This document shows positions 26,301 through 64,000 of a DNA stretch of 64,000 nucleotides, in pieces. Source of the stretch: Macrostomum lignano (lineage: Eukaryota). A model generated the notes under the pieces. The model was not told the origin of the DNA, did no database searches, and was given only the letters and a program-made list of their open reading frames with translations. The position numbers and the translations under genes were made by a program. Every line of letters starts with the position of its first letter. The first letter of the stretch is position 1. The stretch covers positions 186,001-250,000 of the forward strand of contig NIVC01001476.1 of assembly GCA_002269645.1 (NCBI GenBank), read 5' to 3'.

Positions 26301-29300
26301 GGTGTAGAATGGATTGCTAATCTATCGTCTATGAATAAAGGTGTAGAATGGATTGCTAATCTATCATCTATGAATAAAGGTGTAGAATGGATTGCTAATC
26401 TATCGTCTATGAATAAAGGTGTAGAATGGATTGCTAATCTATCGTCTTTGAATAAAGGTGTAGAATGGATTGCTAATCTATCGTCTATGAATAAAGGTGT
26501 AGAATGGATTGCTAATCTATCGTCTTTGAATAAAGGTGTAGAATGGATTGCTAATCTATCGTCTATGAATAAAGGTGTAGAATGGATTGCTAATCTATCG
26601 TCTATGAATAAAGGTGTAGAATGGATTGCTAATCTATCGTCTATGAATAAAGGAGTAGAATGGATGGGAGTTGACAATCTATAGTTTATGGATAGATAAA
26701 TCGAACGGATTGTTAATCTAGCTAGTGTCCGTTAAGCCTACTGAATAAAAAATCCAATTTTTTAAATATCCTTTTATGCATCTCTTCTGTCTCGAGCCCA
26801 GCGATTATGCCAATGTGTTTTGTTGGCTATCCATTAACATGTATACCAAGTGCCAAAAACGTGAACTTCTGTTTTGCTTCATTACATAATTCCTTAACTG
26901 GCAGAATGCGTTCTAACTACTGCTCAGCAATAGATCAGTAGTGCGGTTCGCTAATTGCACTATAAATTAATTTCAAATGGACATTATAAATATACTTTCA
27001 CCCAGGCAAAATAGCAATTTGTGTTGGCCATTATTCCACAGTTGCTCCCCAATGTACATTTACCCATGTACAAATATGTCATCACGTGACTGCTTTCCCG
27101 CATTTATAATCTTACTATCCACCCCTCTGCATATTTGCATTAGCATGGAATAAGTGTGGAATAATGGCATCTGGGCTGGGCTAAATGCAATAAAATGCAT
27201 TTGTTTAGTGTATAGCACAGATACTGGAATAACTAGATGGGTCACTTAGCACATTTGCGTGCAAGCTACTTTCAGTTCAGTAGTAAGTTTAACAGAAACA
27301 TTTTATTGTATTTTTAAAGCCAAGGCTCATTTATTGGCTCTTACCCCCCAGCTTAAACGCTCCAAGCGCGCCTTTCCACACTATCCCCCACCCCGCGCCC
27401 AATTTCTAATTGGCAGCCTAAAGCTGCCATGTACATTTCAGTGGACTGGCTAATGTATATTACTGCTGAACCAATTAGCAAGCTGTTTACACCTCCAAGC
27501 TTGGGCTTCTAAACTTATCAAAGTCATTTCAGCCGCCTTTATTTTTATAAAATAACTTATGTATTCTTCTTTGCTACTGAACTGAAAGTAGAAAGCTGTT
27601 TTGCTAAGTATTATATGCCTGGGTGGCCGCCCATCTAGATATTTCGGTGCTCGCATTTCTGCAGCCATTATTCAACACAGCTAGGGGTGCATACTGAACA
27701 AGTCTGCCATTGCACTGATCTAGTTTTGGTATTAACCAAAATCGTCTATATTTATCTGGTTAATCGCCGCACAGACAATCTCTAATGAAAATTCAAATAA
27801 AATATTATTCGGATTTCTATTCTCAAAACTTCCACGTTACCCTTTCAGAAGAAGAGCAGCAGCGCAGGCAAAGAGGTGACGCAGAGGAGCCCAGCGGGTG
27901 AGTGGGGAACAGTCGAGGCAAGGAGCCTCAAATATTTGAAATTTTAGGGCTGCGGGCGACATGTCCCACAACCAGCGCTCACACAGGGTGTACAGCAGCC
28001 CTGACTTTCTAATCGTCGGGAATGTACACTCTTCAATGTACACACGAGGGTTTGGCCCTGATGGCTGTGAATCGCACACGACAACGCCATTTTTTGTACT
28101 CAAGCCCCAAATATGGCCGCTCATGGAATCGAACCAGGAGTCGAGGCGTGAGGAATTATAAAAAAAAAACAGCGAATAACCTACTCTAGAATATCCCAGA
28201 AGTAGCCTCAGAAATGTCTCAAAGTAAGCCTAAGATTCCTAATAATTATTTCTCGGAAAAATAAGCACACAAATATCAACTTATACACCTTGAGAAGCTT
28301 GAGAGTAGCACCTACAATTACCCCAATAGTATCTTCTGACATACCCACAGAAATACACACAGATGTACCCATAGAAATGCCAATCGAAGTGCATGTACTC
28401 TCCCAAATACCACAGAAAGAGTACCCCCCGAAATACCCAAGAACAAATACCCTCCGGAATACCCCAGAAAGAATACCCTCCAAAATACCCCAGAAAGAAT
28501 ACCCTCCGAAATATCCAAGAACAAATACCCTCCGGAATACCCCAGAAAAAATACCCTTCGAAATATCTCAGAGGTAATACCCTTAAAAACACCTACGAAC
28601 AAATACCTTTCGAAACACCCCCAAAAATACCCTCAGAAATACCCCAAAAAATAATACCCTCCTACCCGAAAAAATACCCTCCAAACTACCCCAGAAGAAG
28701 GCTAAAACACTGGGAAATTCCCCGCCCCTCCCCCACGCAGTAGCGGTGGCCGAACCTCCAGCGCCAAGCCGGCGCCGCTGCCGAAGACCAAGGCCGGCGC
28801 CGCGGTGGTCGACGACGGCAGCGGCAAGCGCGTCAGCGGGGTGATCATCGAGCGCGACCAGGATTCCGACGACGACCAGTTCGTGGTGGAGGAGGCGCCG
28901 CCAACCCTGCTAGCCGGCGGCCTCGGTGACGACGGCGGCGGCGGCCTCGACGACGACGAAGAAGGTCGCGACGAGCAGCACGGCGGGCTGGTGAAGGAGA
29001 TGCTGAAGTCCAAGCAGGAGTTCAAGGACGCCAGCGGCGGCGCCAAGGACGCCGGCGGCAAGACGGTGCTGACCACCACAGACGCCAACAGGAAGCGGGA
29101 GAAGGCGGCCACGGCCAGGGAGATTGACAGGCTGAAGCAGCAGCTGCAGGCGCTGACCCGGGAGGCCAACCCGCTCGGCAAAGTCATCGACTACGTGCAG
29201 GAAGACCTGGACTCCATGTCAAAGGAGCTGGAGCGGTGGCGCGCCGAGACAAAAGAGGTCATGGCCCGGCTGAAGCAGGAGCAGAGGTACGAAATCCAAT

Positions 29301-30311
29301 AATATCTCTAATAATATTATGATCCCTGATCCCAAATATTCTCTGATCCCAAATACTCTCTGATCCCAAATACTCTCTGATCCCAAATACTCTCTAATCC
29401 GAAATATTCCCTGATCCCAAATACTCTCTAATCCGAAATATTCCCTGATCCGAAATATTCCCTGATCCCAAATATTCTCTGATCCCAAATATTCTCTGAT
29501 CCCAAATGCTCTCTAATCCTAAATATTCCCTGATCTCAAATATTCCTTGATCCCAAATATTCCCTGATCCCAAATATTCCTTGATCCCAAATATTCCCTG
29601 ATCCCAAATATTCCTTGATCCCAAATATTCCCTGATCCCAGATATTCCCTGATCCTAAATATTCCCTGATCCCAAATATTCCGTGATCCTAAATCCTAAT
29701 TCCCTCATCCCAGATATTCCCTGATCCTAAATATTCCCTGATCCCAAATATTCCCTGATCCCAAATATTCACTGATCCTAAATATTCCCTCAAGCCAGAT
29801 ATTCCCTGATCCTATATATTCCCCGATTCTAAATATTCCCTGATCTCAAATATTCCTTGAATCTAAATATTCCCCGATCCTATATTCTTAGATTCCATAT
29901 TTCATGATATTGAATACCAACTCTGTCAGCCCCTGAAGCCACGCACCCACCAGACCCTGAAGCCACGCACCCACCAGACCCTGAAGCCACGCACCAACCA
30001 GCCCCTGAAGCCACGCACCCACCAGCCCCTGAAGCCACGCACCAACCAGCCCCTGAAGCCACGCACCAACCAGCCCCTGAAGCCACGCACCCACCAGACC
30101 CTGAAGCCACGCACCCACCAGACCCTAAAGCCACGATCTCCCCCGGTCCCGCAGCACGGCAGACGCCTCGCTGAATGGCCTGCGGCACCAGCTGGCTGAG
30201 CTGGAGCAAGCCGAGCGCGACAAGCTCGACCTCATCGCCACCGTCAAGGCCAACATCGTGCGCAACGATGAGCGAATATCCAAAATGATCGAAGCGCTGA
30301 GCCGCTCCTGA
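17301..30311 (+). CDS. IFT54: Intraflagellar transport protein 54 / TRAF3-interacting protein 1 (MIP-T3), ~653 aa, 9 exons
   Basis: Exons 17301-17553, 17660-17772, 17892-18398, 18524-18643, 19138-19236, 24450-24567, 27849-27897, 28741-29286, 30155-30311; all phases consistent, 1962 nt. N-terminal CH-like domain ([46 protein letters not shown]), K/E/R-rich linker, RPSSAKG motif, HGGLVKEML, ANPLGKVIDYVQEDLDSMSKELERW, KANIVRNDERISKMI. Confidence 0.95.
19357..19662 (-). mobile_element. CORE-SINE (MIR-like), apparently full length
   Basis: On the minus strand: A box tagtttagtgg, B box ggttcgattcc, CORE tgtgtccttgagcaagacacttaactctgcattgcttcagttcacccagctgtaaaatggg, (ATT)n tail. Confidence 0.85.
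20362..21967. repeat. 11-bp satellite (~145 units, three variants)
   Basis: gcatggaacta / gcatgtaacta / gcatggagcta units. Confidence 0.98.
21968..23737 (-). mobile_element. Mariner (DD34D) DNA transposon with long TIRs, intronic in IFT54
   Basis: Inverted repeats 21978-22160 and 23549-23730 (~95% identical by eye) flank the transposase ORF; outermost ~10 bp of the two ends differ. Confidence 0.92.
22235..23308 (-). CDS. Mariner transposase, intact ORF, 357 aa
   Basis: N-terminal HTH with DKPRSGRP, WVPRLL linker, catalytic TQDES / HCDNARPH / YSPDLAPSDY with 34 residues between D2 and D3. Confidence 0.95.
   Translation of the reverse strand: MASAYGDKVSQRLIVFAFADEGMSVNTIHQRLVSRFGDDACCRATVANWVRKRKDGEMSVQDKPRSGRPATAVNDSSAILIEELVSENGHITIDELANAAGISCGSVFQILHEHLGLSKLVSRWVPRLLTAEQKNRRYEVCLQQRAAISALGDEFKSRFVTQDESMFALYDPLSRRESRAWLPRGGGGGDVESAGTYPKKIMLSVFWDASGPLMFTWYGQGQTQNSERFCDELTRLRQELLQRRRIVRKGVLLHCDNARPHSAALTRSHIDSLRFQQWQHPPYSPDLAPSDYGLFGHVKAQLRGKRFASFPELQTAVEGLIRATPRDTWLGWIEELRMRYDKCIQRNGDYFEDFHDW
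25223..26665. repeat. 39-bp minisatellite (~37 copies)
   Basis: gaataaaggtgtagaatggattgctaatctatcgtctat unit; source of the NKGVEWIANLSS ORFs. Confidence 0.98.
27965..28150 (-). mobile_element. tRNA-derived SINE copy, degraded
   Basis: Reverse complement has B box ggttcgattcc and gattagaaagtcagggctgctgtacaccctgtgtgag. Confidence 0.7.
28380..28690. repeat. Degenerate gaaataccc repeat, intronic
   Basis: Repeated gaaataccc / aataccctc motifs. Confidence 0.75.
29320..30135. repeat. Two intronic minisatellites: 19-bp (29320-29880) and 24-bp (29928-30135)
   Basis: ctgatcccaaatattccc and ccctgaagccacgcacccaccaga units in the last IFT54 intron. Confidence 0.92.
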
Positions 30312-30639
30312 GCTTTGAGCGGGGGAAAACTTTTCTGTGATTCTGATTTGTTTTAAAATGCAATGCTTTAGCTTCATCGCTTCGGAAGAAGTATAATCTC
30401 TTTTTTATAAAGTACTTCTATCTCTGTGAGCTCACCTAACAACAGAAGAATTTCGAACACGGCTTGAAGACGAGAAACAGTAATTACTTGTAACAGTATA
30501 TATCGATTAGTCTACTCAATTCTTATCTGAATTGGGATAAGTGACGACAGAATGGACAGGTAGGGTAGAGTGCTTGTACAGCTGGGGACGAGACGTTGTT
30601 GCCAAAATGACATGAGAGCAGCTTTGACCTCTCCTGTCT

Positions 30640-30955
30640 TTTTCTCTTCTCTCTCCTCTCTCCTCTCTCTTCTCTCCTCTCTCCTCTCTCCTCTCTCCTG
30701 TCTTCTCTCTCCTCTCTCCTCTCTCCTCTCTCCTCTCGCCTCTCTCCTCTCTCCTCTCTCCTCTCTCCTCTCTCCTCTCTCCTCTCTTCTCTCTCCTCTC
30801 TCTCTCTCCTCTCTCCTCTCTCCTCTCCCCTCTCCTCTCTCTCTCCTCTCCCCTCTCCTCTCTCCTCTCTCCTCTCGCCTCTCTCTTCTCTCTCCTCTCT
30901 CCTCTCTCCTCTCTCCTCTCTTCTCTCCTCTCTCCTCTCTCCTCTCTCCTCTCCC
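30640..30955. repeat. (CT/CCTCT)n pyrimidine microsatellite
   Basis: ctctcctctctcctct runs. Confidence 0.95.
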
Positions 30956-31454
30956 CTTTTGCAGAGAGCCAGCCGCATTCAACTGCATTCTCAGCTTGGC
31001 AACCGCCCCCCCCTCACCCCTAGCAGAGTCGCACTTTGTCCAAAAATCAAAATTTCTAACGTTTGCTAACTATCATCGAATGCTGAATATGCTACTAACA
31101 GCGAAAGCCATCAGCTAAGTAGTATAATAGATATATCTTACAGTCTATATGTATACAATTAACGAGCAAGTTGTTAGCGCACCGCACTCTGCTGCACTTT
31201 CGATTTAAACAGCAGAGCCCCCTCAACACTCTTAATGACTTTGATTTACTCGTGAAATTGACTGAATTATGCTTTATTTTAGTTTACTACTCAAGTCTCA
31301 ATGTCAATAAAAAGTAATAAATAATAGATGCCTGATGAATTCGACTCAAACACACGAGCATCTTGTCGGCTCAGCCAATTTAATGGAGCGAGCTGATTTT
31401 ATACGGCTTCTGGTCTGAGCTTCTGGTTCGCCACTACCGCTTTCATAGGACCCA

Positions 31455-33180
31455 CAACAGACATCCCAAACAGAACAGCGCCCTACAACAGACACTCCAA
31501 ACAGAACAGCGCCCTACAACAGACACTCCAAACAGAACAGCGCCCGACAACAGACACCCCAAACTGAACAGCGCCCGACAACAGACACCCCAAACAGAAC
31601 AGCGCCCGACAACAGACACCCCAAACTGAACAGCGCCCGACAACAGACACCCCAAACAGAACAGCGCCCTACAACAGACACTCCAAACTGAACAGCGCCC
31701 GACAACAGACACTCCAAATGGAACAGCGCCCTACCATGAAGCAAATTTGACTAAAAAATTGTCATCAGCAGCATAGTTAGAAGCGAGACACTGAAAAACA
31801 TCAACCCGTATTTCCCCAGACTCTTCTCCACCCCCTAGCACAGAAAATTTTCCTATTGCTGTCCCTCTAGGCAACTCGTGACGCGCAACAATCTTGGGCT
31901 GGCGCCAGCGCCTGCTAAAAATTCAATCTCAAAAGTAGGCCAGCTCGAGGATAAACAGTCGCGCAGGCGGATAATCTAGAGATGAGGGGGGGGGCGTCGC
32001 AGCGCCTACCTAATTGAAACTTCCGGGAGAACTTCGGGATCCGGGATGCGGGCTCTGAGATAGATCCAACCCCCCCCCAGTGCTCAATACAGAAGCCTTC
32101 CACCCAAACTGCGCGACTCTTCAAAGCAGAAAACGAAGACGAAGGGAGGCAGGTGAAAAAGCCGGCAACGAATGTAAAAAAATAGTTTTCTAAAAGCCTA
32201 TGCAAAAAACAGTCGGAGTAGCTTTTGAGAGGGGCAACAGTCAGTCTGCTTTTGCGTGACCAACTGCCAAGATTCTCATGACAAGCGTCTTTAGTTAAGG
32301 CGAAAAATTCAAAATAAGTTTCCGAAATGATTTTTTTGATAGAGCCAATCGATTCTAGACTTTGGTAAACTGACTGATCTAAAGTGGCTTCAGTTTAGGG
32401 TGTCTCTTGTAGGGTGCTGTTCAGTTTGGGGTGTCTGTCATAGGGCGCTGTTCAGTTTGGGGTGTCTGTTGTAGGGTGCTGTTCAGTTTGGGGTGTCTGA
32501 TGTAGGGCGCTGTTCAGTTTGGAGTGTCTGTTGTAGGGCGCTGTTCAGTTTGTGGTGTCTGTTGTAGGGCGCTGTTCAGTTTGGAGTGTCTGTTGTAGGG
32601 TGCTGTTCAGTTTGGGGTGTCTGTCATAGGGCGCTGTTCAGTTTGGGGTGTCTGTTGTAGGGCGCTGTTCAGTTTGGGGTGTCTGTAGGGCGCTGTTCAG
32701 TTTGGGGTGTCTGTTGTAGGGCGCTGTTCAGTTTGGGGTGTCTGTAGGGCGCTGTTCAGTTTGGGGTGTCTGTAGGGCGCTGTTCTGTTTGGAGTGTCTG
32801 TTGTAGGGCGCTTTTCAGTTTGGGGTGTCTGTTGTAGGGCGCTGTTCAGTTTGGGGTGTCTGTCATAGGGCGCTGTTCAGTTTGGGGTGTCTGTTGTAGG
32901 GCGCTGTTCAGTTTGTGGTGTCTGTTGTAGGGCGCTGTTCAGTTTGGGGTGTCTGTTGTAGGACGCTGTTCAGTTTGGAGTGTCTGTTGTAGGGTGCTGT
33001 TCAGTTTGGGGTGTCTGTCATAGGGCGCTGTTCAGTTTGGGGAGTCTATTGTAGGGTGCTGTTCAATTTGGGGTGTCTGTTGTAGGGTGCTGTTCAGTTT
33101 GGGGTGTCTGTTGTAGGGCGCTGTTCAGTTTGGGGTGTCTGTTGTAGGGCGCTGTTCAGTTTGGGGTGTCTGTTGTAGGG
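31455..33180. repeat. Two inverted arrays of one ~31-bp minisatellite flanking a ~650-bp spacer
   Basis: cagacaccccaaactgaacagcgccctacaa at 31455-31735; its reverse complement at 32390-33180. Confidence 0.93.
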
Positions 33181-33709
33181 CTGCTCCTAGGCGAGTTGCT
33201 GCTGGTAGGAGCAAGCCCTGTTGCTTTACCTGCCCCAATGACACATTGGGATTTACAATCAGATGGTGGGGCAACATGCGCTGCTGGAAATTTTTCAGCC
33301 AGATTCTCTTCAAACTGCCGAGCACCCATTTACTCACAGGCAACAATAGTTCATTGTTTGGGTAAACATTTTTTCTAGAAAAGCAGAACTGAACTCAGAC
33401 CGAGCCAGCAAGCAGACGGGAAGGAAGGGACAGGCAAACATCGTAAGCGACGAAATCTGAAGTGGGCAGCAGGCCGCTCACTGCTGCATTCCCTGACATT
33501 TGGGAGACCTCTTGAGAATCTGGGGATGGAAAGAGCCACAATTCCGCAGATCCCTAAAAGCTCCGTTTCTGGAGCGCCGCAGGAGAGCGAAACACTGCTT
33601 GTTCGCTCTTCAGGCACTGACCAGGGAGCACTAGGACAGAGATTCTGGAGTGGCGACTGAGCTGACAGCGGAATTCGTCAGAGTTCGTGTTGCTACAGGG
33701 ATAACGTAG

Positions 33710-34283
33710 AATCCAGACTTCTATCTTCAGGCGTCCCTGGTCCAACTCTCGTCATCAATCCCAGTAAGAGAGCTTCGCAGTTTCCAATCCAGACTTCTAT
33801 CTTCAGGCGTCCCTGGTCCAACTCTCGTCATCAATCCCAGTAAGAGAGCTTCGCAGTTTCCAATCCAGACTTCTATCTTCAGGCGTCCCTGGTCCAACTC
33901 TCGTCATCAATCCCAGTAAGAGAGCTTCGCAGTTTCCAATCCAGACTTCTATCTTCAGGCGTCCCTGGTCCAACTCTCGTCATCAATCCCAGTAAGAGAG
34001 CTTCGCAGTTTCCAATCCAGACTTCTATCTTCAGGCGTCCCTGGTCCAACTCTCGTCATCAATCCCAGTAAGAGAGCTTTGCAGTTTCCAATCCAGACTA
34101 CTATATTCAGGCGTCCCTGGTCCAACTCTCGTCATCAATCCCAGTAAGAGAGCTTTGCAGTTTCCAATCCAGACTACTATATTCAGGCGTCCCTGGTCCA
34201 ACTCTCGTCATCAATCCCAGTAAGAGAGCTTTGCAGTTTCCAATCCAGACTTCTATCTTCAGGCGTCCCTGGCCCAAGCTCTC
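33710..34283. repeat. 76-bp tandem repeat (~7.5 near-identical copies)
   Basis: ctatcttcagg recurs at 33721, 33797, 33873... Confidence 0.97.
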
Positions 34284-34588
34284 CTGAATCCACTTTGTCA
34301 TGTAGAAATGCTCCCAGTCGCCGAGCTGGCTCCATCCTGCCTTCGCTCCTCGGCTGGCACAGATTGGCCCCGGTTGCGTCCCCTGAGAGGTCCCCCCCCG
34401 CCCGGTGACTAGCGAGATTTACCTGCAGCTCTAGGCCCGAGCCGGCACTTCTTTCTCTCTCTTTGCTTTTTTCGCGAGCGAGACACTCTTTATAAAGTTA
34501 TTTCGCTCTCGACCAAATTTTTGTTAGGCTAATTTTAAAAAAACCCAGTGCAGCACTGTCTGTTTATCATTCTACCCCAGTGAGGATT

Positions 34589-35657
34589 ATGAATTTTCTA
34601 GGAATTCGAGGCGCAGGAGCGGCCCTGTTGCTGGTGCTGCTGATCGCTGCGGCTCAGCTACAAGTGGTGAGCCTTGCATTGCGGAGTGTGGAGGCTGGGA
34701 TGTGGGCAGATTATGCGTAGCTATCCCAGATAGTTGCTAAGGAAGTGAAAATTCTGGCCTCAATGGAATCTGTGCTTGCGAAAGTTGCAGATAAATTCGG
34801 GGTATCAGAATAAAATCAAGTAGCAGAGTGACGAGACAAAATTCACGGTGTGAAAAGACTCTCCCTTCCCACCAAATTAGCGGAGTGACAAGACTCCATT
34901 ATGAAATTAGTAAAATGGCAAGACTGTGACACGATTTTTTGGCAGAGTGACAAGATTGGCTAATTGGTAGAGTGACAAGACTCCCCCAGCTAATTATCGG
35001 AGTGACAAGACTCCCCCAGCTAATTAGCGGAGTGACAAGACTCCCCCCAGCTAATTAGCGGAGTGACAAGACTCCCCCAGCTAATTAGCGGAGCGACAAG
35101 ACTCCCCCAGCTAATTAGCGGAGTGACAAGACTCCCCCAGCTAATTAGCGGAGTGACAAGACTCCCCCAGCTAATTAGCGGAGCGACAAGACTCCCCCAG
35201 CTAATTAGCGGAGTGACAAGACTCCCCCAGCTAATTAGCGGAGTGACAAGACTCCCCCAGCTAATTAGCGGAGTGACAAGACTCCCCCAGCTAATTAGCG
35301 GAGTGACAAGACTCCCGCCCGATTCCGCAGTCGCAGTCGCGCAGTCTCCGACCATCGAGCTACTTCGAAGAGGACCAGCAGCTCATTGACGACGATTCCA
35401 ACGAATTTGCCGATTCCGACTGCGACGATCTTGACTCCGTCGACGACTGCGGAGACGACACCCGAAGGGAGCCGCCGGCCAGGGCTGACGACGACTGGGT
35501 TCGCTCGGAGCCGTCGCGCCGCAGCGACCTCCGCAAGCGCTACGACCCGCTGCTGGCCATCCGACGTCGGCGAAACGGCGACGGCGGCGGTGACCAACGC
35601 GGATTTCTCCGACAGACAAGCCGGCAGCGACGCTACGACCCGCTGCAGTTCATCTGA
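34589..35657 (+). CDS. Neuropeptide precursor (134 aa) encoding YDPLLAI and YDPLQFI
   Basis: Exon 34589-34666 MNFLGIRGAGAALLLVLLIAAAQLQV|GTGAGC; exon 35331-35657 SQSRSLRPSSYFEEDQQLIDDD...SDLRKR-YDPLLAI-RRRR-NGDGGGDQRGFLRQTSRQRR-YDPLQFI*. Signal peptide, acidic spacer, basic cleavage sites and a repeated peptide. Confidence 0.8.
34970..35316. repeat. 30-bp minisatellite in the neuropeptide intron
   Basis: gagtgacaagactcccccagctaattagcg x ~11, ending right at the acceptor. Confidence 0.96.
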
Positions 35658-36254
35658 CCGGCGGACAGCAGAGTCAGCGGCACGGCAGCGTAGAAAGAAT
35701 GTTTTCAATAACGGTTAAAAATGGAAAATTAAGGAATGGCGAAAAACTTACTTGGCTGAGAAACTTTGAGATGAAAGAAATACAAGCTGGAATCGCTTCA
35801 TACTGCGCGTTCGCATTCTGCAATTATTGCTTTTTGTCCACTTTTTACTGTTTGAACTTATCTGTCTGAGTAGGATCTGGTGTACGCCTAATGTGACTCA
35901 TTTGCCTGTCTATGTTCTGGTGCACACCTAATGTAACTCATCTGCATAGGTTCTAAAGTATAACTGTGATAGAAAAAAATTGTGGCGATGCATTGAGTGT
36001 CAAAATTGAAATCTGTTGTGCCGTTTCACTTCTAGCCCAGCATAGTGCTGTGAGAAATTATTATACGGACGGCAGCTCAGGTATCGGTCGCTCACCTCAT
36101 CTCATTAGATTTGCTGTATCAACTGTATAAGCTTTGTAAACTGGCAGTGTTAGTGCTTGCGCACTTGTGCCTAGCTGCGGAGGATGGCAGAAGAGAGCGC
36201 CCTATTCTTTTCACAAGTTCACAAGTGATTTCAAATTCCAAGCCTTCGCACGGT

Positions 36255-36585
36255 CCCATCTCAACACCAGTCCCATCTCAGCACCAGTCCCATCTCAACA
36301 CCAGTCCCATCTCAATACCTGTCCCATCTCAACACCAGTCCCATCTCAAAACCAGTCCCATCTCAAAACCAGTCCCATCTCAACACCAGTCCCATCTCAA
36401 TACCTGTCCCATCTCAACACCAGTCCCATCTCAAAACCAGTCCCATCTCAACACCAGTCCCATCTCAACACCAGTCCCATCTCAACACCAGTCCCATCTC
36501 AACACCAGTCCCATCTCAACACCAGTCCCATCTCAACACCAGTCCCATCTCAACACCAGTCCCATCTCAACACCAGTCCCAGTCC
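36255..36585. repeat. 17-bp minisatellite
   Basis: caccagtcccatctcaa units. Confidence 0.95.
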
Positions 36586-37079
36586 TATCTCATCCCTAGC
36601 TTCAGTCACATCTCAATCTCTAGAGGCGCAGGCCTGCTCGATTTGCAGTTACGCTCGTAAAAGAGTTCTAAAGGTACTATATTGTCAATTTAGTCGCATG
36701 ACTGCGAGATTAAATATGACTGTCAGAGAGCAGAAAACCTGTTTCGAATTGCAGCCATAAAGTGAGAACTGGGACAAGTTTAAAAAATTATTTTCCCGCT
36801 TTGAAAACGAAAGGTTTTTGTTCGAAATATTTCTCCAGACAGCAATGTGAGCTTTGCTCGATATGCGTTTATTTGCATTTACAAGCAATGCAGGAAAAAA
36901 AGAAACGACATTAATAATTAAAAAATATTTTTGGATTGTCTGACTTTTACAGCCTGTTTTCAAAAACAAATATTTTTCCCGAAATGTGCTTATCATGCTG
37001 CTTTGGTCAGTAGATTATCATGAATCAGTACACGTACGTGTGATAAAATTCCAAAATAATAATTGTTCCTAAGCACTTA

Positions 37080-38305
37080 GTCCCAGTGCCAGTCCCAGTG
37101 CCAGTCCCAGTGCCAGTCCCAGTGCCAGTCCCAGTGCCAGTTCCAGTACCAGTACCAGTGCCAATGCCAGTCCCAGTGCCAGTCCCAGTGCCAGTCCCAG
37201 TGCCAGTTCCAGTACCAGTACCAGTGCCAATGCCAGTCCCAGTGCCAGTCCCAGTGCCAGTCCCAGTGCCAGTTCCAGTACCAGTACCAGTGCCAATGCC
37301 AGTCCCAGTGCCAGTCCCAGTGCCAGTCCCAGTGCCAGTTCCAGTACCAGTACCAGTGCCAATGCCAGTGCCAGTGCCAGTCCCAGTGCCAGTGCCAGTC
37401 CCAGTCCCAGTGCCAGTGCCAGTTCCAGTACCAGTACCAGTGCCAATGCCAGTGCCAGTGCCAGTCCCAGTGCCAGTCCCAGTGCCAGTTCCAGTACCAG
37501 TACCAGTGCCAATGCCAGTGCCAGTGCCAGTCCCAGTGCCAGTGCCAGTCCCAGTCCCAGTGCCAGTGCCAGTCCCAGTCCCAGTCCCAGTCCCAGTGCC
37601 AGTGCCAGTGCCAGGCCAGTGCCAGTGCCAGCCCCAGTCCCAGTGCCAGTCCCAGTGCCAGTTCCAGTACCAGTACCAGTGCCAATGCCAGTGCCAGTGC
37701 CAGTCCCAGTGCCAGTGCCAGTCCCAGTCCCAGTGCCAGTGCCAGTCCCAGTCCCAGTCCCAGTCCCAGTGCCAGTGCCAGTTCCAGTACCAGTACCAGT
37801 GCCAATGCCAGTGCCAGTGCCAGTCCCAGTGCCAGTCCCAGTGCCAGTTCCAGTACCAGTACCAGTGCCAATGCCAGTGCCAGTGCCAGTCCCAGTGCCA
37901 GTGCCAGTCCCAGTCCCAGTGCCAGTGCCAGTCCCAGTCCCAGTCCCAGTCCCAGTGCCAGTGCCAGTGCCAGGCCAGTGCCAGTGCCAGCCCCAGTCCC
38001 AGTGCCAGTCCCAGTGCCAGTTCCAGTACCAGTACCAGTGCCAATGCCAGTGCCAGTGCCAGTCCCAGTGCCAGTGCCAGTCCCAGTCCCAGTGCCAGTG
38101 CCAGTCCCAGTCCCAGTCCCAGTCCCAGTCCCAGTGCCAGTGCCAGTGCCAGGCCAGTGCCAGTGCCAGTGCCAGCCCCAGTGCCAGTGAAGTGTCAGTC
38201 CCAGCCCCAGTGCCAGTTTTAGTGCCATGCAGTGCCAGTGCCAGTCCCAGCGCCAGTCCCAGTGCCAGTGCCAGTCCCAGTGCCAGTCCCAGTGCCAGTG
38301 CCAGT
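37080..38305. repeat. (CCAGTG/CCAGTC)n hexamer satellite with higher-order blocks
   Basis: ~200 hexamers; marker gttccagtaccagtaccagtgccaatg recurs at 66-bp spacing early in the array. Confidence 0.98.
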
Positions 38306-38537
38306 CTAATCGCTTAGACTGAAATGCTTAAATCTATATGATAGTTCATTGATTTTTATCAGCCTATATTCATTCAAGGTTTATAATCTCTGTTATCAGA
38401 CCCAGGAACTATAGTTGTCTATGGTAACAGTCAATCAGAGCATACTTAACTATTGTTCTCGGCTCCAAAATAACAGTTTGTTTAAGCAACTATCCTCAAT
38501 CCGATCATTTGCAGTAGCCGCACTTCTAAAAAGATCA

Positions 38538-41166
38538 ATGGGTCCTGATGAAGATGACCAGTCGCCAGATATTCACCACTTCTTTATCGATAAGCAAGTG
38601 ATGCTTGATAGCATCAGCAACTTCTGGTTAAATTTTCCATTCTACATTCTTGTTCTACTGACTGCCTACTTTGTACTGAGGTGAGTAGTTTCATGATAAG
38701 CTCGCATCAGTTCTACTGGCTTTTTATGAGAATCTAAATGCATGAAGATGCAACATGAATTGTGGGACTTAGTCATGCACTCCTAGAGGGTCTTCGCGGG
38801 TTTATCGGCCACTGGTGTTTACTGGCTTAGTTTATGCATGGGATGTTGGTGTATTCTGAGTTAGTTTATGAAGTGTTAGTGCATTGTGGGTTAATTTATA
38901 GGGTGTTGGTGTACTCTGGCTTAGTTTATGGGGTGTTGGTGTACTCTGGCTTAGTTTGTAGGGTGTTGGTGTACTCTGGGTTAGTTTATGGGGTGTTGGT
39001 GTATTCTGGGTTAATTTATGGGGTGTTGGTGTACTCTGGGTTAGTTTTTGGGGTGTTGGTGTATTCTGGGTTAGTTTATGGGGTGTTGGTGTATTCTGGG
39101 TTAGTTTATGGGGTGTTGGTGTATTCTGGGTTAGTTTATGGGGTGTTGGTGTATTCTGGGTTAGTTTATGGGGTGTTGGTGTATTATGGGTTAGTTTATG
39201 GGGTGTTGGTGTACGACTTCCGCGCCCTACGCGACCTGGTTACAAGTGGCCGCTTCTGTCTGGCATTTGCCGAGGCGCTAGAAGAACGGCCAGATACAAC
39301 AACCCCAGGCGAATATCCGGACATCAGTGCCGCCATCCAAGCCGCCGCTACAAAAACTCTACCGCTGGTGAAGCCAGCAGAAAGGAGTCGGCCAGTGTGG
39401 CAGAACGACGAAGTGCTGCGGCAGGCCCGAGCTGACAGTGGAGAGACTGCGGAGGAGCGGACAGCCCGCGGAGAAGGAAGACGAGACTCTAGTGGAGGAA
39501 TTTAAAGCCCGGCAACGCGCCGCGGTAGAGACCGCTTTTCAAGAGATCACGGACGCCGGTCCCGACAAGAAACCGCGTGCTGTCTGGTCGGTCGTCAATC
39601 AGCTGACAGGCCGCAAGAGACGCAACGCTCTGAACCTGGCGGGTGACACACCCGAAGAGAGGCGAAACGAGCTGCGGACCTTCTTCGCTGGTATCGTCAA
39701 CGCGCCTCCTCCGCCGCAAAGGGACGACATGTCATGGCCCACGGAGGTTGAGCTGCCAGAGGAGAGCTCCTTTAACATCAGCCCCATCACCATCGACGAA
39801 GTGCTCCAACTTGCAAAGAAGACGCCAGGCAACAAGGCTACTGGACCAGACGACGTGCCTGTCGAGGTGCTGCGCCTCCTGCAAGTCGCGCTGGAAGTCC
39901 CACGAGTGATGAACTACGTGCTAGCTGGGGGCCCCGCCCCTGCTGAGTGGCGGACTGCGCATATCGTCGGGATCCCAAAGAAACCAGGTTCCGTCAAGGT
40001 CGAAGAACATCGCGGGATTTCGCTAATGTCCTGCACAGCTAAGCTATTTAACAGAGTTTTGCTGTCGCGGCTGCAGCCAGTGCTGGACCCATTCCTCCGG
40101 CGCGAGCAAAATGGATTCCGGCCAGGCAAAGGCACCGTGACCAAAATTCTCGCTCTGCGTCGAATTCTAGAAGAGGCCCGCATCCACCAGTCGACCATCA
40201 TCTGCATCTTCGTAGACTTCCTGAAGGCCTTTGACTCGGTGTCGAGGCGGGTCATCGCGAACATCCTGCGCGCGTATCACGTACCCGAGCAGCTGGTGAC
40301 GGCTGTGTTAGCTCTGTAACAGGAAACTAGGGAGGCAGTTGTGACACCGGATGGCCATTCCGACTTCTTCGACACGTCTTCCAGCGTTCTCCAAGGGGAC
40401 ACCTTGGCTCCTTTTCTCTATTCGTCCTGGTCCTGGACTGGGTACTGCGCACTGACCTCCCTGACGACTCCAAAGGATTCTTGCTCTGCCGCAGAACAAG
40501 CAGGCGACACCCCGAGAAGCGACTCTCCGTCCTAGCGTTCGCGAACGATCTAGCGCTGCTGTCTAGCACAGCTGAAGGAGCTCAACGCCTGCTAGACCAA
40601 CTGACGGCGGCGGCCGCTGTGATCGGACTGTCCGTGAATACCAAAAAGAAAATGGTGTTGACCGTGCCGACGGACCTCCCAGCTGAGATCTACTGCCGCT
40701 GCACGAACGTGGTATGGTGGTCAGGTGCCAAGCATCACGGAGGACATGGCACGGCGCAGGGCGCTTGCCTAGGGGCACATTCCGCACCGTGTGGACTGTC
40801 CTGCAGAGCCCCGCGCTGCCGGATCGGCTGAGAGGGCGGCTGTTCCAGGCCGTCATTGAAACCGTCCTCTTTTACGACGGGCTGCTGCTATCCCTTCAAG
40901 GGCTGCGGCGGCTTGGTCAGGCGAGAAGTCTGCGTTTCGTCGACCTGCTTTTAAGAGACGCTGAAATCTCCGACCGCTAGCGGACTCGCTATTCTGCGCA
41001 AATCTGCGCTTGCGCGCGCATTTTGACAGCACCCCAACTTAATTGGCTTGCCCAGGGTTGCTGTAGTTTGTTGTTGTTTGTTGTTGTTGTGTACGACTAA
41101 ACTGAAACATTTTCCAATTTCAGACATCTTGCCGAAGAGACAGCAGAAGTCCGAAGTGAGACCTGA
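38538..41166 (+). CDS. Putative 61-aa single-pass membrane microprotein (2 exons)
   Basis: Exon 38538-38680 MGPDEDDQSPDIHHFFIDKQVMLDSISNFWLNFPFYILVLLTAYFVLR|GTGAGT; exon 41124-41166 (tttcag|A HLAEETAEVRSET*); phase 2 matches; aataaa near 41314. The N-terminus could be longer. Confidence 0.45.
38830..39212. repeat. 30-bp minisatellite
   Basis: gggttagtttatggggtgttggtgtattct units. Confidence 0.95.
39219..41088 (+). mobile_element. 5'-truncated, decayed non-LTR retrotransposon (RTE-like reverse transcriptase)
   Basis: KATGPDDVP, WRTAHIVGIPKK, HRGISLMSCTAKLFNRVLLSRL, EQNGFR, FVDFLKAFDSV, LQGDTLAPFL, FANDLAL (YADD degenerated); frameshifts and a stop at 40317; (GTT)n tail; 10-bp TSD GTGTACGACT (39209-39218, 41089-41098). 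Confidence 0.92.
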
Positions 41167-42287
41167 GTGAACCATTGTTTTCGAGATCATTCGCCTCCAT
41201 TTGCTTATCGATTGGTTTGACGCAACTTTGAATATCACTGATGTTATGCTACTGTAATACAGTTTGTAATTGTCTAAAACAAGCTAATAATATAAATTAA
41301 TCGGTGTTTTCAATAATAAATAATGGTTGCCCAAGTTAATTAGGGAATCAGCAAAAGTAGTTGTTATTTTTTTAATAGTAAAAGGAAAATCTGTTAGAAA
41401 GGTTGGTTGGTAGTCTGAGAATCCTCAATTAGTACCTGAGAGATAATCTGCCAATACAATATACCAGCTATAGTGTATCCAGACACCCGTCCGCGCGTCC
41501 CCACCTGCTTAATTAGATTTCTGCTTTAGGGCTTTGATTGAGCCGCATGCAATTATATCAGCCGAGCAGCCAGCCAGGTGACAAGATTGGCCAATCATTG
41601 GGCGTCGGATAAAGGCGACCGTAGACGGAGGAGAAAATTGCTGAGTTACCCACCAATTATAGTTGCCACACAAAGGTAGGGACAGCTGAGCATCAATGTT
41701 TTGGCCCTCTAAATCTTGGGATCTGCGTTTTCTACTCGCACTTTATTAGGTGGGAGTTATGGTTAGTGTTCGGGTTCGGGTTAGTAAAGGGCAATCGCTT
41801 CAGCCAAATAGTTACACAGAATCTTCATTGACATCAGGCTGTTATACTCGGGCGCCTATAAATCAGTCATTGAAACCCTCGCATGCCTTGTGTATTTTTT
41901 AGGACTTTAAAACTGAATGAAGCGGCCAGTATTATTGCTACTGTGCTAACTGCATGATAGTTTAAGCACATGCATTCCGAATAAGGTGGTGCACAGCTAA
42001 AGATAACGCTTGAAAAGTACGATCTATACGTGACTCAATGTGACTCAACAAAAACATGGGATTGACAAGTAGAACAAATAAATCGGCGATAAAGCACACA
42101 CAACGCAAAATTACTCAAGGTAGCGAAGGTAGAGAGAATGCATACGAGTACTATAAGGTATTATCTACTGTAAGGGATGATTTACGCTACAACACGGATG
42201 TTTGTTCTTCACGCCATTGAAAATTTTTTTACGAGCTTATAGTGCGTGAAAAACTTTGCATTCCGTAAAAAAGTGAAAAAAGTTTCG

Positions 42288-52004: not shown

Positions 52005-52628
52005 ATGTCAGTCTCCTCTCTGGCCCGCCCCGGCCGATTTCTCTACTTCGGTTTTGGCAGCAACCTGCTGCGTGAGCGGCTTCGTCTGGCCAACAAGTCG
52101 GCCAAATTTCAGGCCACCGGCCGCCTGTCCGGTTATCGGCTGGAATTCGCCGACCCATCGCATTCGCTGCCGCAGTCGGATCGCGATAAAGCGCAGCGCA
52201 CTTGGCACGGCGGCGCGGCCACTATAGTTGAAGCCGACGCCCAGAAGTTTGTCTTTGGCACCGTCTGGTCCCTAGCCGATGGCGACTCCGACTCGTTGGA
52301 CAGTCAGGAAGGCGTCGACAGTGGAATCTACGAGCGAATCAGCGTGACAGTCAGGCTGCTGGACTCCGGGCAGGAGGTCCGGTGCCGCAGCTACCGCATG
52401 GTCCGCTGCCAGCCCATGGCCCCGTCGCCGCACTATCTCGACATCATCCTCCGCGGCGCCGTTCAATCCGGCTTTCCAGCCGACTATGTCGACAATTTGC
52501 GCAAACGGCAGCACAATGGCTACGCTGGCGAGTGCATAAAATACTTTGAAGTGTTGCGGCAGTGCGCGGCAGCCGCTGATGATGTACCGCCATGCCAGAT
52601 TGATGCGCTGCGCGGCCTGCAATTCTGA
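52005..52628 (+). CDS. GGCT: Gamma-glutamylcyclotransferase, single exon, 207 aa
   Basis: FLYFGFGSNL, WHGGAATIVE, VFGTVW, SLDSQEGV (catalytic Glu), PSPHYLDIILRGA, HNGYAG motifs. Confidence 0.95.
   Translation: MSVSSLARPGRFLYFGFGSNLLRERLRLANKSAKFQATGRLSGYRLEFADPSHSLPQSDRDKAQRTWHGGAATIVEADAQKFVFGTVWSLADGDSDSLDSQEGVDSGIYERISVTVRLLDSGQEVRCRSYRMVRCQPMAPSPHYLDIILRGAVQSGFPADYVDNLRKRQHNGYAGECIKYFEVLRQCAAAADDVPPCQIDALRGLQF

Positions 52629-59367: not shown

Positions 59368-64000
<4,633 letters not shown>

What the first reader, a model, noticed from the sequence alone, without database searches (positions are those of the whole stretch)
34589..35657. Hidden neuropeptide precursor yielding YDPLLAI and YDPLQFI
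Seen: a two-exon 134-aa prepropeptide absent from the ORF track: signal peptide, acidic pro-region with a Cys pair (DCDDLDSVDDC), KR-YDPLLAI-RRRR and RR-YDPLQFI-stop; neither peptide has a Gly amidation signal. Knowledge (from memory, verify): planarian secreted-peptide prohormones of the spp-15/16 type carry FDPI(Q/M)F/Y-amide peptides, and pedal-peptide/orcokinin-type peptides have FD-x-I motifs. Inference: a non-amidated YDPL variant of this family, possibly undescribed.
Basis: partly seen in the sequence, partly recalled or inferred. Interest (0 to 1): 0.75.

Follow-up and report, generated by a model that had tools for sequence, protein, structure and literature searches.

The report
Divergent flatworm FDPI-family neuropeptide precursor gene
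This is a real two-exon gene of the flatworm Macrostomum lignano, already in GenBank only as a 'hypothetical protein', that most likely encodes a small secreted prohormone cut into two 7-residue peptides (YDPLLAI, YDPLQFI) of the known flatworm FDPI neuropeptide family, so it is a modest annotation gain rather than a new kind of thing.

Summary
Exon 1 (34589-34666), a GT-AG intron and exon 2 (35331-35657) give a 134-aa protein with a hydrophobic signal sequence, an acidic pro-region, KR-YDPLLAI-RRRR and RR-YDPLQFI-stop.

The window is Macrostomum lignano scaffold NIVC01001476.1. The exact protein is already annotated from RNA-seq-based transcript models as hypothetical protein BOX15_Mlig001801g2, so it is missing only from a prokaryote-style ORF list.

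Non-amidation is therefore not new.

M. lignano itself has three unannotated multi-copy relatives: AYFDPINY-Gly x15, FDPLIM/FDPLII x8 and FDPLYGM x7 or more. The window gene reads best as a divergent, low-copy, spp-16-like paralogue sharing the species' DPL core and aliphatic C-terminus.

Similarity is limited to the motif and the layout. Expression site, processing and cross-species conservation could not be tested.

Verdict: new member of a known kind, modest interest.

The parts
34491..34496 (+). TATAAA box 98 nt upstream of the ATG (candidate core promoter)
   Evidence: Read directly. Identical in all three genomic copies. Function is inferred, not tested.
34589..34666 (+). Exon 1: start codon plus residues 1-26, the whole signal peptide (n-region with R7, hydrophobic core A9-A22, AAA|Q candidate signal-peptidase site)
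   Evidence: Translation. The Kyte-Doolittle 11-residue maximum is 3.17 at residues 11-21, and -3/-1 rule sites follow residues 20-22. UniProt names older models with the same N-terminus 'Secreted protein'.
34667..35330 (+). Phase-0 GT-AG intron (664 nt): donor GTGAGC, acceptor CCCGATTCCGCAG
   Evidence: The junction is the one used in the GenBank transcript-derived model. Donor and acceptor are kept in the two other genomic copies, although intron length varies (664, 694 and 1457 nt).
34959..35316 (.). 30-bp minisatellite inside the intron (GCTAATTAGCGGAGTGACAAGACTCCCCCA, 11.9 copies)
   Evidence: Tandem Repeats Finder. One extra unit in L001. Strongly expanded in L003.
35331..35462 (+). Start of exon 2: acidic pro-region, residues 27-70 (16 Asp/Glu against 2 Arg/Lys), with the Cys57/Cys66 pair DCDDLDSVDDC
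35463..35540 (+). Arg-rich linker, residues 71-96, with basic sites RR71-72, RR89-90 and RKR94-96
35541..35561 (+). Predicted peptide 1, YDPLLAI (residues 97-103; calculated [M+H]+ 804.4502)
   Evidence: Unchanged in all three genomic copies.
35562..35573 (+). RRRR cleavage site (residues 104-107)
35574..35633 (+). Spacer NGDGGGDQRGFLRQTSRQ followed by the RR126-127 cleavage site
   Evidence: The spacer carries the G112S difference in copy g3.
35634..35657 (+). Predicted peptide 2, YDPLQFI (residues 128-134; calculated [M+H]+ 895.4560), and the TGA stop
   Evidence: Having the last peptide end at the stop matches Schistosoma npp-26, Opisthorchis P0016 and Smed spp-16.

Best explanation
The locus is an expressed two-exon gene of Macrostomum lignano (Mlig001801) encoding a 134-aa secretory prohormone.

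Proposed steps:
1. Exon 1 supplies a signal peptide that sends the protein into the secretory pathway. This is inferred from the sequence.
2. In dense-core vesicles a PC2-type convertase cuts after KR96, RRRR107 and RR127, and a carboxypeptidase trims the basic residues. This is inferred. A neuronal, essential PC2 homologue exists in this species.
3. The products are two free-acid heptapeptides, YDPLLAI and YDPLQFI, plus acidic pro-region fragments. No Gly is available for amidation, which the sequence shows directly.
4. The peptides belong to the flatworm [F/Y]-D-P-[I/L] family (planarian spp-15/spp-16, Schistosoma npp-26), whose schistosome member is neuronal, affects motility and gonads on RNAi, and activates SmGPCR9.
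5. The peptides most likely act as neuropeptide ligands of a GPCR of that kind. This is inferred by analogy.

Within M. lignano the gene is the divergent, low-copy (spp-16-like) member of a set of at least four such genes.
For: Gene model:
- Splice signals are intact and the frames join.
- The product is identical to GenBank BOX15_Mlig001801g1/g2.
- GenBank models for this assembly were derived from RNA-seq transcript assemblies plus TransDecoder (PMC5730564).
- Three genomic copies keep the ORF, splice sites and TATA box.

Prohormone features:
- A hydrophobic N-terminus with AXA-type sites.
- An acidic spacer.
- Two duplicated heptapeptides, each bounded by basic runs or the stop. None of 200,000 shuffles reproduced this, and the motif occurs nowhere else in 64 kb.

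Family:
- spp-15 gives FDPIQFa/FDPIQFG, and spp-16 gives QFDPIMY with the last copy at the stop.
- npp-26 precursors from 8 trematodes share the layout of signal peptide, spacer, KR-flanked xFDPIx[FY] copies and a last copy at the stop.
- npp-26 peptides are MS-confirmed as free acids (PMC9495596).
- npp-26 is neuronal, has RNAi phenotypes and triggers SmGPCR9 signalling (PMC13367911).

Same-species paralogues:
- P0022 has RR/KR-FDPLIM/FDPLII x8, P0044 has KR-FDPLYGM x7 or more, and the P0015 tail has KR-AYFDPINY-G-KKR x15.
- The Leu at position 4, the 7-residue length and the aliphatic C-terminus of the window peptides are therefore normal for this species.

Other support:
- M. lignano PC2 is expressed in the nervous system, and its knock-down is lethal (PMC4490696).
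- All three amino-acid differences in copy g3 (L14P, S62P, G112S) lie outside the peptides and basic sites.
Against: - Similarity to the family is confined to about 6 residues plus the flanking basic residues. BLASTP against P0022 gives E=0.003 and against P0044 E=0.026, for single pairwise comparisons.
- A weight matrix built from non-Macrostomum members scores the two sites only 3.8 and 1.3 bits (shuffle p about 0.08). A matrix from the M. lignano paralogues gives p about 0.03.
- There are only two peptide copies. Tyr replaces the otherwise invariant Phe, and an extra C-terminal Ile follows the position where other members end.
- The copies differ by 3 non-synonymous and 2 synonymous codons, which shows no purifying selection. 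That is too few changes to conclude anything.
- No SignalP or NeuroPred run, no expression localisation and no peptidomics data were available.
Confidence: 0.65

Rival explanations
1. It is a secreted, highly acidic and Arg-rich protein that is not a neuropeptide precursor. It could be a gland, adhesive, eggshell or seminal-fluid product, of which M. lignano has many lineage-specific examples. In this reading the YDPL repeats are a small internal duplication that resembles FDPI peptides by coincidence.
For: - Motif-only statistics are weak.
- The protein is 19% Asp and 18% Arg after the signal peptide, so D- and R-containing short motifs are easy to obtain.
- There is no cross-species conservation evidence and no expression data.
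Against: - Both repeats sit exactly between basic processing sites or the stop (0 of 200,000 shuffles).
- The last repeat ends at the stop, as in npp-26 and spp-16.
- Three other genes in the same species carry KR-flanked FDP[IL] peptides.
- The small size and the signal-plus-spacer-plus-peptides layout are typical of prohormones.
Confidence: 0.17
2. It is a decaying or neofunctionalising duplicate of a multi-copy FDPL precursor. It is still transcribed, but its peptides have drifted (F>Y, extra Ile, only two copies left) and may no longer activate the family's receptor.
For: - It has a low copy number compared with 8-15 copies in P0022, P0044 and P0015.
- It departs from the otherwise invariant Phe1.
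- Copy g3 has a Leu-to-Pro change in the signal-peptide core, and the copies differ by 3 non-synonymous versus 2 synonymous codons.
Against: - All three genomic copies keep an intact ORF, splice sites, every basic site and both peptides.
- Planarian spp-16 is a similarly low-copy gene whose peptides were detected by MS.
Confidence: 0.1
3. The peptides are truncated members of the bilaterian pedal-peptide/orcokinin (PP/OK) family, and the whole flatworm FDP[IL] family descends from PP/OK.
For: - Starfish PP/OK-type peptides contain the same core: SMP FGKGGAYDPLSAGFTD and ArPPLN1b FGGKGAFDPLSAGFTD (PMC5656890).
- M. lignano P0044 has one FDPLSGM copy, which resembles FDPLSAGF.
Against: - The peptides are 6-8 residues rather than 12-18, and they lack the C-terminal Gly-Phe-x half.
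- The family profile did not retrieve recognisable PP/OK precursors.
- No searchable paper proposes the link.
- The candidate receptor relationship was not examined.
Confidence: 0.07
4. It is not a gene: a chance open frame in GC-rich, repeat-rich DNA.
For: The region lies among minisatellites, and several overlapping mechanical ORFs exist on both strands.
Against: - The GenBank model is transcript-derived and has the identical product.
- The model is conserved in three genomic copies.
- The overlapping ORFs (35295-35708 minus strand, 35386-35718 plus strand, and others) match no Pfam family. One of them is simply the frameshifted tail seen in old-assembly models.
Confidence: 0.01

Closest known systems
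Schmidtea mediterranea spp-16 (secreted peptide prohormone-16; QFDPIMY)
   Same: A small precursor (about 100 aa against 134 aa). It has few peptide copies separated by irregular spacers, x-D-P-[I/L] core peptides cut at KR/RR, no amidating Gly, and a last peptide that ends at the stop codon. Its peptides are MS-confirmed as free acids.
   Different: spp-16 has Phe at core position 1, Ile at position 4 and a C-terminal Tyr, and it lacks a long acidic Cys-containing pro-region. The window peptides have Tyr1, Leu4 and an additional C-terminal Ile. No sequence similarity exists outside the core.
Schmidtea mediterranea spp-15 (FDPIQF-amide x8, FDPIMF-amide)
   Same: YDPLQFI aligns residue for residue with the Gly-extended form FDPIQFG detected by MS (Y/F, D, P, L/I, Q, F, I/G). 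spp-15 is expressed in the CNS in planarians.
   Different: spp-15 is multi-copy and amidated. In M. lignano the closer counterpart is the P0015 tail (AYFDPINY-Gly x15), not the window gene.
Schistosoma npp-26 (Smp_071050; NFDPILF, SYFDPILF, SYFDPIIY and others) and its trematode orthologues
   Same: The layout is signal peptide, spacer, then KR-flanked peptides with the last one at the stop. The peptides are non-amidated free acids confirmed by LC-MS/MS. The gene is neuronal, has RNAi motility and gonad phenotypes, and gives a candidate GPCR ligand.
   Different: npp-26 has 5-7 tightly packed copies with an invariant F-D-P-I and an aromatic C-terminus. The window gene has 2 copies, Y-D-P-L and an aliphatic C-terminus. 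Function in M. lignano is untested.
M. lignano paralogues A0A1I8HH48 (FDPLIM/FDPLII), A0A1I8FZM5 (FDPLYGM) and the tail of A0A1I8IE52 (AYFDPINY-Gly)
   Same: Same species. The first two share the D-P-L core. All have basic flanks. FDPLYGM shares the 7-residue length, and both FDPL genes share the aliphatic C-terminus (M or I) and the lack of amidation.
   Different: They are high-copy tandem arrays with Phe1. The window gene has two copies, Tyr1 and a long acidic pro-region. BLASTP similarity is limited to KR-[FY]DPL. None is annotated as a neuropeptide.
Pedal peptide/orcokinin-type peptides (for example starfish myorelaxant peptide FGKGGAYDPLSAGFTD)
   Same: They contain the identical YDPL/FDPL tetrapeptide, are non-amidated, and come from multi-copy precursors.
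   Different: PP/OK peptides are 12-18 residues with a conserved C-terminal Gly-Phe region that is absent here. Homology is unproven.

Membership tests
Flatworm FDPI prohormone family (spp-15/spp-16/npp-26) | N-terminal signal peptide | tested here: met
   The hydrophobic core spans A9-A22 (KD maximum 3.17), with a basic residue at R7 and AXA-type sites after residues 20-22. UniProt labels models with the same N-terminus 'Secreted protein'. No dedicated predictor such as SignalP was available.
Flatworm FDPI prohormone family (spp-15/spp-16/npp-26) | Repeated short peptides with an aromatic-Asp-Pro-[Ile/Leu] core at or near the peptide N-terminus | tested here: met
   Y-D-P-L occurs twice, directly after KR and RR. 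Asp-Pro is invariant. Tyr for Phe and Leu for Ile are conservative changes, and Leu is also used by M. lignano P0022 and P0044.
Flatworm FDPI prohormone family (spp-15/spp-16/npp-26) | Peptide ends two residues after the core on an aromatic residue (F/Y, free or amidated) | tested here: not met
   YDPLLAI has Ala at that position, and YDPLQFI has Phe there but carries one more residue (Ile). This feature is also not met by M. lignano P0022 (…IM, …II) or P0044 (…YGM), so it may define only the neodermatan and planarian members.
Flatworm FDPI prohormone family (spp-15/spp-16/npp-26) | Each peptide bounded by di- or multibasic convertase sites | tested here: met
   The boundaries are KR|YDPLLAI|RRRR and RR|YDPLQFI|stop. 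None of 200,000 shuffles gave two such units.
Flatworm FDPI prohormone family (spp-15/spp-16/npp-26) | Last peptide copy ends at, or within a residue or two of, the stop codon | tested here: met
   The window gene ends YDPLQFI*. Compare ...KREYFDPIIY* in Schistosoma...RAYFDPIMF* in Opisthorchis and ...KRQFDPIMY* in spp-16.
Flatworm FDPI prohormone family (spp-15/spp-16/npp-26) | Statistically significant sequence similarity to established members | tested here: inconclusive
   The PSSM from non-Macrostomum members gives shuffle p about 0.08, and the PSSM from M. lignano paralogues gives p about 0.03. BLASTP gives E=0.003 and 0.026 in single comparisons, over the motif only. The window protein's hit in the profile search does not count, because it was part of the query alignment.
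Flatworm FDPI prohormone family (spp-15/spp-16/npp-26) | Neuronal expression, and mature peptides detectable by mass spectrometry | not testable with these tools
   No expression atlas or peptidomics data for Mlig001801 could be reached. The identifier is absent from the searchable literature.
Flatworm FDPI prohormone family (spp-15/spp-16/npp-26) | Conservation of peptides over spacers in orthologues | not testable with these tools
   Only M. lignano sequences were found. The three in-genome copies are 98-100% identical, and their 3 amino-acid differences all fall outside the peptides, which is not significant.
Pedal peptide/orcokinin (PP/OK) family | Peptides of about 12-18 residues with an N-terminal x-F/Y-D-x-I/L region and a conserved C-terminal Gly-Phe-x region | tested here: not met
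   The predicted peptides are 7 residues long and have no Gly-Phe C-terminal half. Only the YDPL tetrapeptide is shared with starfish SMP.
Pedal peptide/orcokinin (PP/OK) family | Cognate receptor belongs to the PP/OK receptor clade | not tested
   Receptor sequences and their phylogeny were not examined.

The most novel reading that the evidence does not exclude
Macrostomum, an early-branching flatworm, has expanded the FDP[I/L] peptide family into at least four genes. The expansion includes a distinct subclass of non-amidated 6-7-mers ending in an aliphatic residue (FDPLIM, FDPLYGM, YDPLLAI, YDPLQFI). These could have their own receptor(s). Through forms such as FDPLSGM, compared with starfish FDPLSAGF, they could be the missing link showing that the flatworm-'specific' FDPI/npp-26 peptides are truncated pedal-peptide/orcokinin homologues. 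The window gene would then be the most derived member of that series.
Probability: 0.12. Interest if true: 0.55.

Novelty: new member of a known kind. Interest (0 to 1): 0.3.

Why it matters
- **Annotation.** The gene and its three M. lignano relatives are currently labelled 'hypothetical', 'Secreted protein', or with misleading domain names. Recognising them as FDP[I/L]-type prohormones gives names and testable ligands to four genes in a transgenic flatworm model.
- **Link to parasite biology.** The family's schistosome member, npp-26, has just been tied to a GPCR, motility and gonad development. A free-living, genetically tractable species with an expanded set, including Leu4 and aliphatic-ended variants, could be used to study ligand-receptor specificity and the family's ancestry.
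- **Limits.** This does not change any general concept. Non-amidated FDPI peptides, low-copy precursors and the family itself are already known.

Tried and rejected
1. Old-assembly 'paralogues' P0002-P0004 and P0043 were rejected as informative. They are frameshifted or extended models of the same gene; P0002's tail equals the +1 frame of exon 2.
2. The second genomic copy L001 could not be used for a constraint test. The gene region is 99.8-100% identical.
3. The 'g2' suffix was first read as 'second gene in a polycistronic unit'. That was rejected: the suffix numbers copies within a 95% cd-hit cluster.
4. Motif-only PSSM tests gave weak p-values and are reported as such.
5. The Pfam scan found no family for the window protein or for bona fide npp-26. 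The ORFs overlapping exon 2 on both strands have no Pfam match.
6. The Rfam scan of the window found nothing.
7. tblastn of the paralogues against the window found no second family member in the 64 kb.
8. The composite-peptide query did not retrieve planarian spp-15/16 from the protein database. Their sequences were taken from the paper's supplement instead. The spp-15 text there shows an apparent 'FDPPIQFG' conversion artefact, so it was not used quantitatively.
9. Koziol et al. 2016 (Int J Parasitol) and McVeigh et al. 2009, the two catalogues most likely to list Macrostomum neuropeptides, are not held. Prior description there cannot be excluded.
10. W-amide precursors (xFxPWGG-KR; P0021, P0025, P0028-30, P0033, P0036) and other repeat proteins in the profile search were judged unrelated or low-complexity hits.

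Full report
**What is in the sequence.** The window is eukaryotic DNA rich in minisatellites. Window 28589-41657 is identical to Macrostomum lignano scaffold NIVC01001476.1, positions 214589-227657, of assembly Mlig_3_7.

- ATG at 34589, with A at -3 and no upstream ATG after the in-frame stop.
- A 78-nt exon 1 ending GTG|GTGAGC.
- A 664-nt intron ending in a pyrimidine-rich tract and CAG.
- A 327-nt exon 2 ending at TGA 35655-35657.

The joined 405 nt encode 134 aa. The order is a hydrophobic leader (MNFLGIRGAGAALLLVLLIAAAQLQV), an acidic region with the Cys pair DCDDLDSVDDC, an Arg-rich linker, KR-YDPLLAI-RRRR, an 18-residue spacer, and RR-YDPLQFI-stop. No Gly precedes either basic site or the stop.

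The exon-2 frame has no ATG/GTG/TTG, which explains why a mechanical ORF list misses it. The intron carries a 30-bp x 11.9 minisatellite. A TATAAA lies at 34491-34496, 98 nt upstream of the ATG.

**Is it more than chance?** The motif [FY]DP[ILMV]x[FYAM] occurs only twice in all six frames of the 64 kb. Both hits are here and both follow a dibasic pair. Shuffled windows gave a mean of 0.14 and a maximum of 1 for the dibasic-plus-motif pattern. Composition-preserving shuffles of residues 23-134 never produced two dibasic-preceded motifs in 200,000 trials. The two units share 16 identical nucleotides, so they are an internal duplication. That is typical of neuropeptide precursors, but it means they are not independent events.

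**Is it a real gene?** Yes, with high confidence.
- The identical 134-aa protein is GenBank 'hypothetical protein BOX15_Mlig001801g1/g2' (PAA67536.1, PAA89378.1).
- The GenBank annotation of this assembly was produced from RNA-seq-based genome-guided transcript assemblies (StringTie/TACO plus a de novo transcriptome) with TransDecoder ORFs (PMC5730564). The 34666>35331 junction therefore exists in an assembled transcript. I did not see the reads themselves.
- A second copy (L001, NIVC01000152.1) encodes the same protein and has one extra intron repeat unit.
- A third copy (L003, NIVC01000910.1; Mlig001801g3, PAA74970.1) differs at five codons: L14P, A21A, S62P, G112S and G113G. Its intron is 1457 nt. 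It has the same acceptor, a GTGAGT donor, the same TATA box, and unchanged peptides and basic sites.
- Older UniProt models (P0002-4, P0043) are frameshifted or extended versions of the same gene.
- The ORFs overlapping exon 2 on both strands have no Pfam match.

- Planarian spp-15 yields FDPIQF-amide, FDPIQFG and FDPIMF-amide. spp-16 yields QFDPIMY as a free acid, from a 100-aa precursor with few, irregularly spaced copies and the last peptide at the stop (PMC2953531 and its supplements).
- Schistosoma npp-26 yields NFDPILF, SYFDPILF, SYFDPIIY and others, confirmed by LC-MS/MS as free acids (PMC9495596).
- npp-26 is expressed in neuronal clusters. Its RNAi affects motility and gonads, and NFDPILF triggers SmGPCR9 signalling (PMC13367911).
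- A composite-peptide search recovered npp-26 precursors from eight trematodes. All have a signal peptide, a spacer and KR-flanked copies, and nearly all end with a peptide at the stop.
- Non-amidation, low copy number and a terminal peptide are therefore all known states of this family.

**The most informative new result.** An exhaustive profile search and cluster look-ups showed that M. lignano has further unannotated genes of this kind:
- A0A1I8HH48: RR/KR-FDPLIM x7 plus FDPLII.
- A0A1I8FZM5: KR-FDPLYGM, 7 copies or more.
- The tail of the fused model A0A1I8IE52. It is a complete precursor with its own signal peptide and 15 copies of KR-AYFDPINY-G-KKR, which implies an amidated product.

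The last of these is the likely canonical counterpart of spp-15/npp-26. The two FDPL genes show that Leu at position 4, a 7-residue length, an aliphatic C-terminus and the lack of amidation are usual in this species. The window gene therefore reads best as the divergent, low-copy, spp-16-like member of a four-gene set. None of these peptides occurs in the searchable literature. No other family member lies in the window.

**Limits.**
- Similarity is restricted to the core plus the basic flanks. BLASTP gives E=0.003 and 0.026 for single comparisons. Weight-matrix tests give p of about 0.08 and 0.03.
- The protein's own hit in the profile search is by construction, because it was in the query alignment.
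- Tyr replaces the otherwise invariant Phe, and an extra Ile follows the usual C-terminus.
- No orthologue outside M. lignano was found. The three in-genome copies are too similar for a constraint test (3 non-synonymous against 2 synonymous codon differences).
- Expression site, signal-peptide cleavage and processing are inferred. A neuronal, essential PC2 homologue does exist in this species (PMC4490696).
- Two key catalogues, Koziol 2016 and McVeigh 2009, are not held.

**Mechanism proposed.**
1. Co-translational entry into the ER through the exon-1 signal peptide.
2. Sorting to dense-core vesicles.
3. PC2-type cleavage after KR96, RRRR107 and RR127.
4. Carboxypeptidase trimming.
5. Release of the free-acid peptides YDPLLAI and YDPLQFI, which act on a GPCR related to the npp-26 receptor.

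The sequence features are shown. All of the cell biology is inferred.

**Pedal peptide/orcokinin.** Starfish SMP-type peptides contain YDPL or FDPL (FGKGGAYDPLSAGFTD). One copy in P0044 reads FDPLSGM. This is suggestive, but the flatworm peptides lack the Gly-Phe C-terminal half. The profile search retrieved no PP/OK precursor, and no searchable paper links the two families. It remains a low-probability lead.

**Verdict.** This is a new, divergent member of a known flatworm neuropeptide family. It is already present in GenBank as a hypothetical protein, and its interest is modest.

Noticed in passing
not in window: UniRef A0A1I8IE52 (P0015, residues ~2220-2405), A0A1I8HH48 (P0022), A0A1I8FZM5 (P0044), all M. 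lignano: These are three unannotated multi-copy prohormone-like genes of the same peptide family: AYFDPINY-Gly x15, FDPLIM/FDPLII x8 and FDPLYGM x7 or more. They carry misleading automatic names ('MMS1_N domain-containing', 'PSCyt2 domain-containing', 'Secreted protein'). The first is fused onto an unrelated 2.2-kaa gene model.
   Followed up: partly
window 34959-35316 (intron); L001 and L003 equivalents: The intronic 30-bp minisatellite varies in copy number between the three genomic copies. The introns are 664, 694 and 1457 nt, while the exons are nearly identical.
   Followed up: partly
window 34560-34588: A pyrimidine tract followed by AG (ttatcattctaccccAG|tgaggattATG) lies 8 nt before the start codon. 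It looks like a 3' splice site and could be a spliced-leader trans-splice acceptor; about 39% of M. lignano genes are trans-spliced. The AG is kept in copy g3. This was not tested.
   Followed up: no
window 30000-39213: There is a dense run of minisatellites around the gene: 24-bp x5.7 (30000-30135), 7-bp x45 (30643-30957), 31-bp x9 and x26 in opposite orientation (31454-31731, 32389-33181), 76-bp x7.5 (33710-34283, just upstream of the promoter), 17-bp x19 (36253-36581), 6-bp x205 (37079-38305) and 30-bp x12.5 (38838-39213).
   Followed up: no
window 22235-23308 (-): An intact 357-aa ORF has Tc1/mariner-type transposase domains (Transposase_1, DDE_3, HTH). It is a possibly active DNA transposon.
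   Followed up: no
window 39438-40319 (+): A 293-aa ORF has a reverse-transcriptase domain (RVT_1). It is a retroelement fragment about 4 kb downstream of the gene.
   Followed up: no
window 52005-52628 (+): A single-exon 207-aa ORF has AIG2-like/gamma-glutamylcyclotransferase domains (AIG2_2 E=4e-24).
   Followed up: no
window 61364-62170 (-): An open frame ends in helicase-associated HA2 winged-helix and ratchet domains. It is an exon of a DEAH-box RNA helicase gene.
   Followed up: no
not in window: P0014 (JGI metagenome contig, 904 bp) and P0031 (ENA contig, 554 bp): FDPI-family precursors (YFDPIMY x10; IVDPMMY x4) turn up on short metagenome contigs. They are presumably flatworm DNA in environmental samples.
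   Followed up: no
not in window: P0020, Bulinus truncatus KAH9488372.1: A snail protein model carries about 10 RR/KR-flanked SMFDELQV repeats and hits the flatworm family profile (E=7e-13). It may be a molluscan multi-copy peptide precursor fused into a larger model. Its relation to the FDPI family is unknown.
   Followed up: no
not in window: UniRef A0A1I8... models P0002, P0003, P0004, P0043: Old-assembly models of this same gene carry frameshifts and automatic names such as 'Kinesin motor domain-containing protein' and 'Death inducer-obliterator 1'. These are annotation artefacts.
   Followed up: yes
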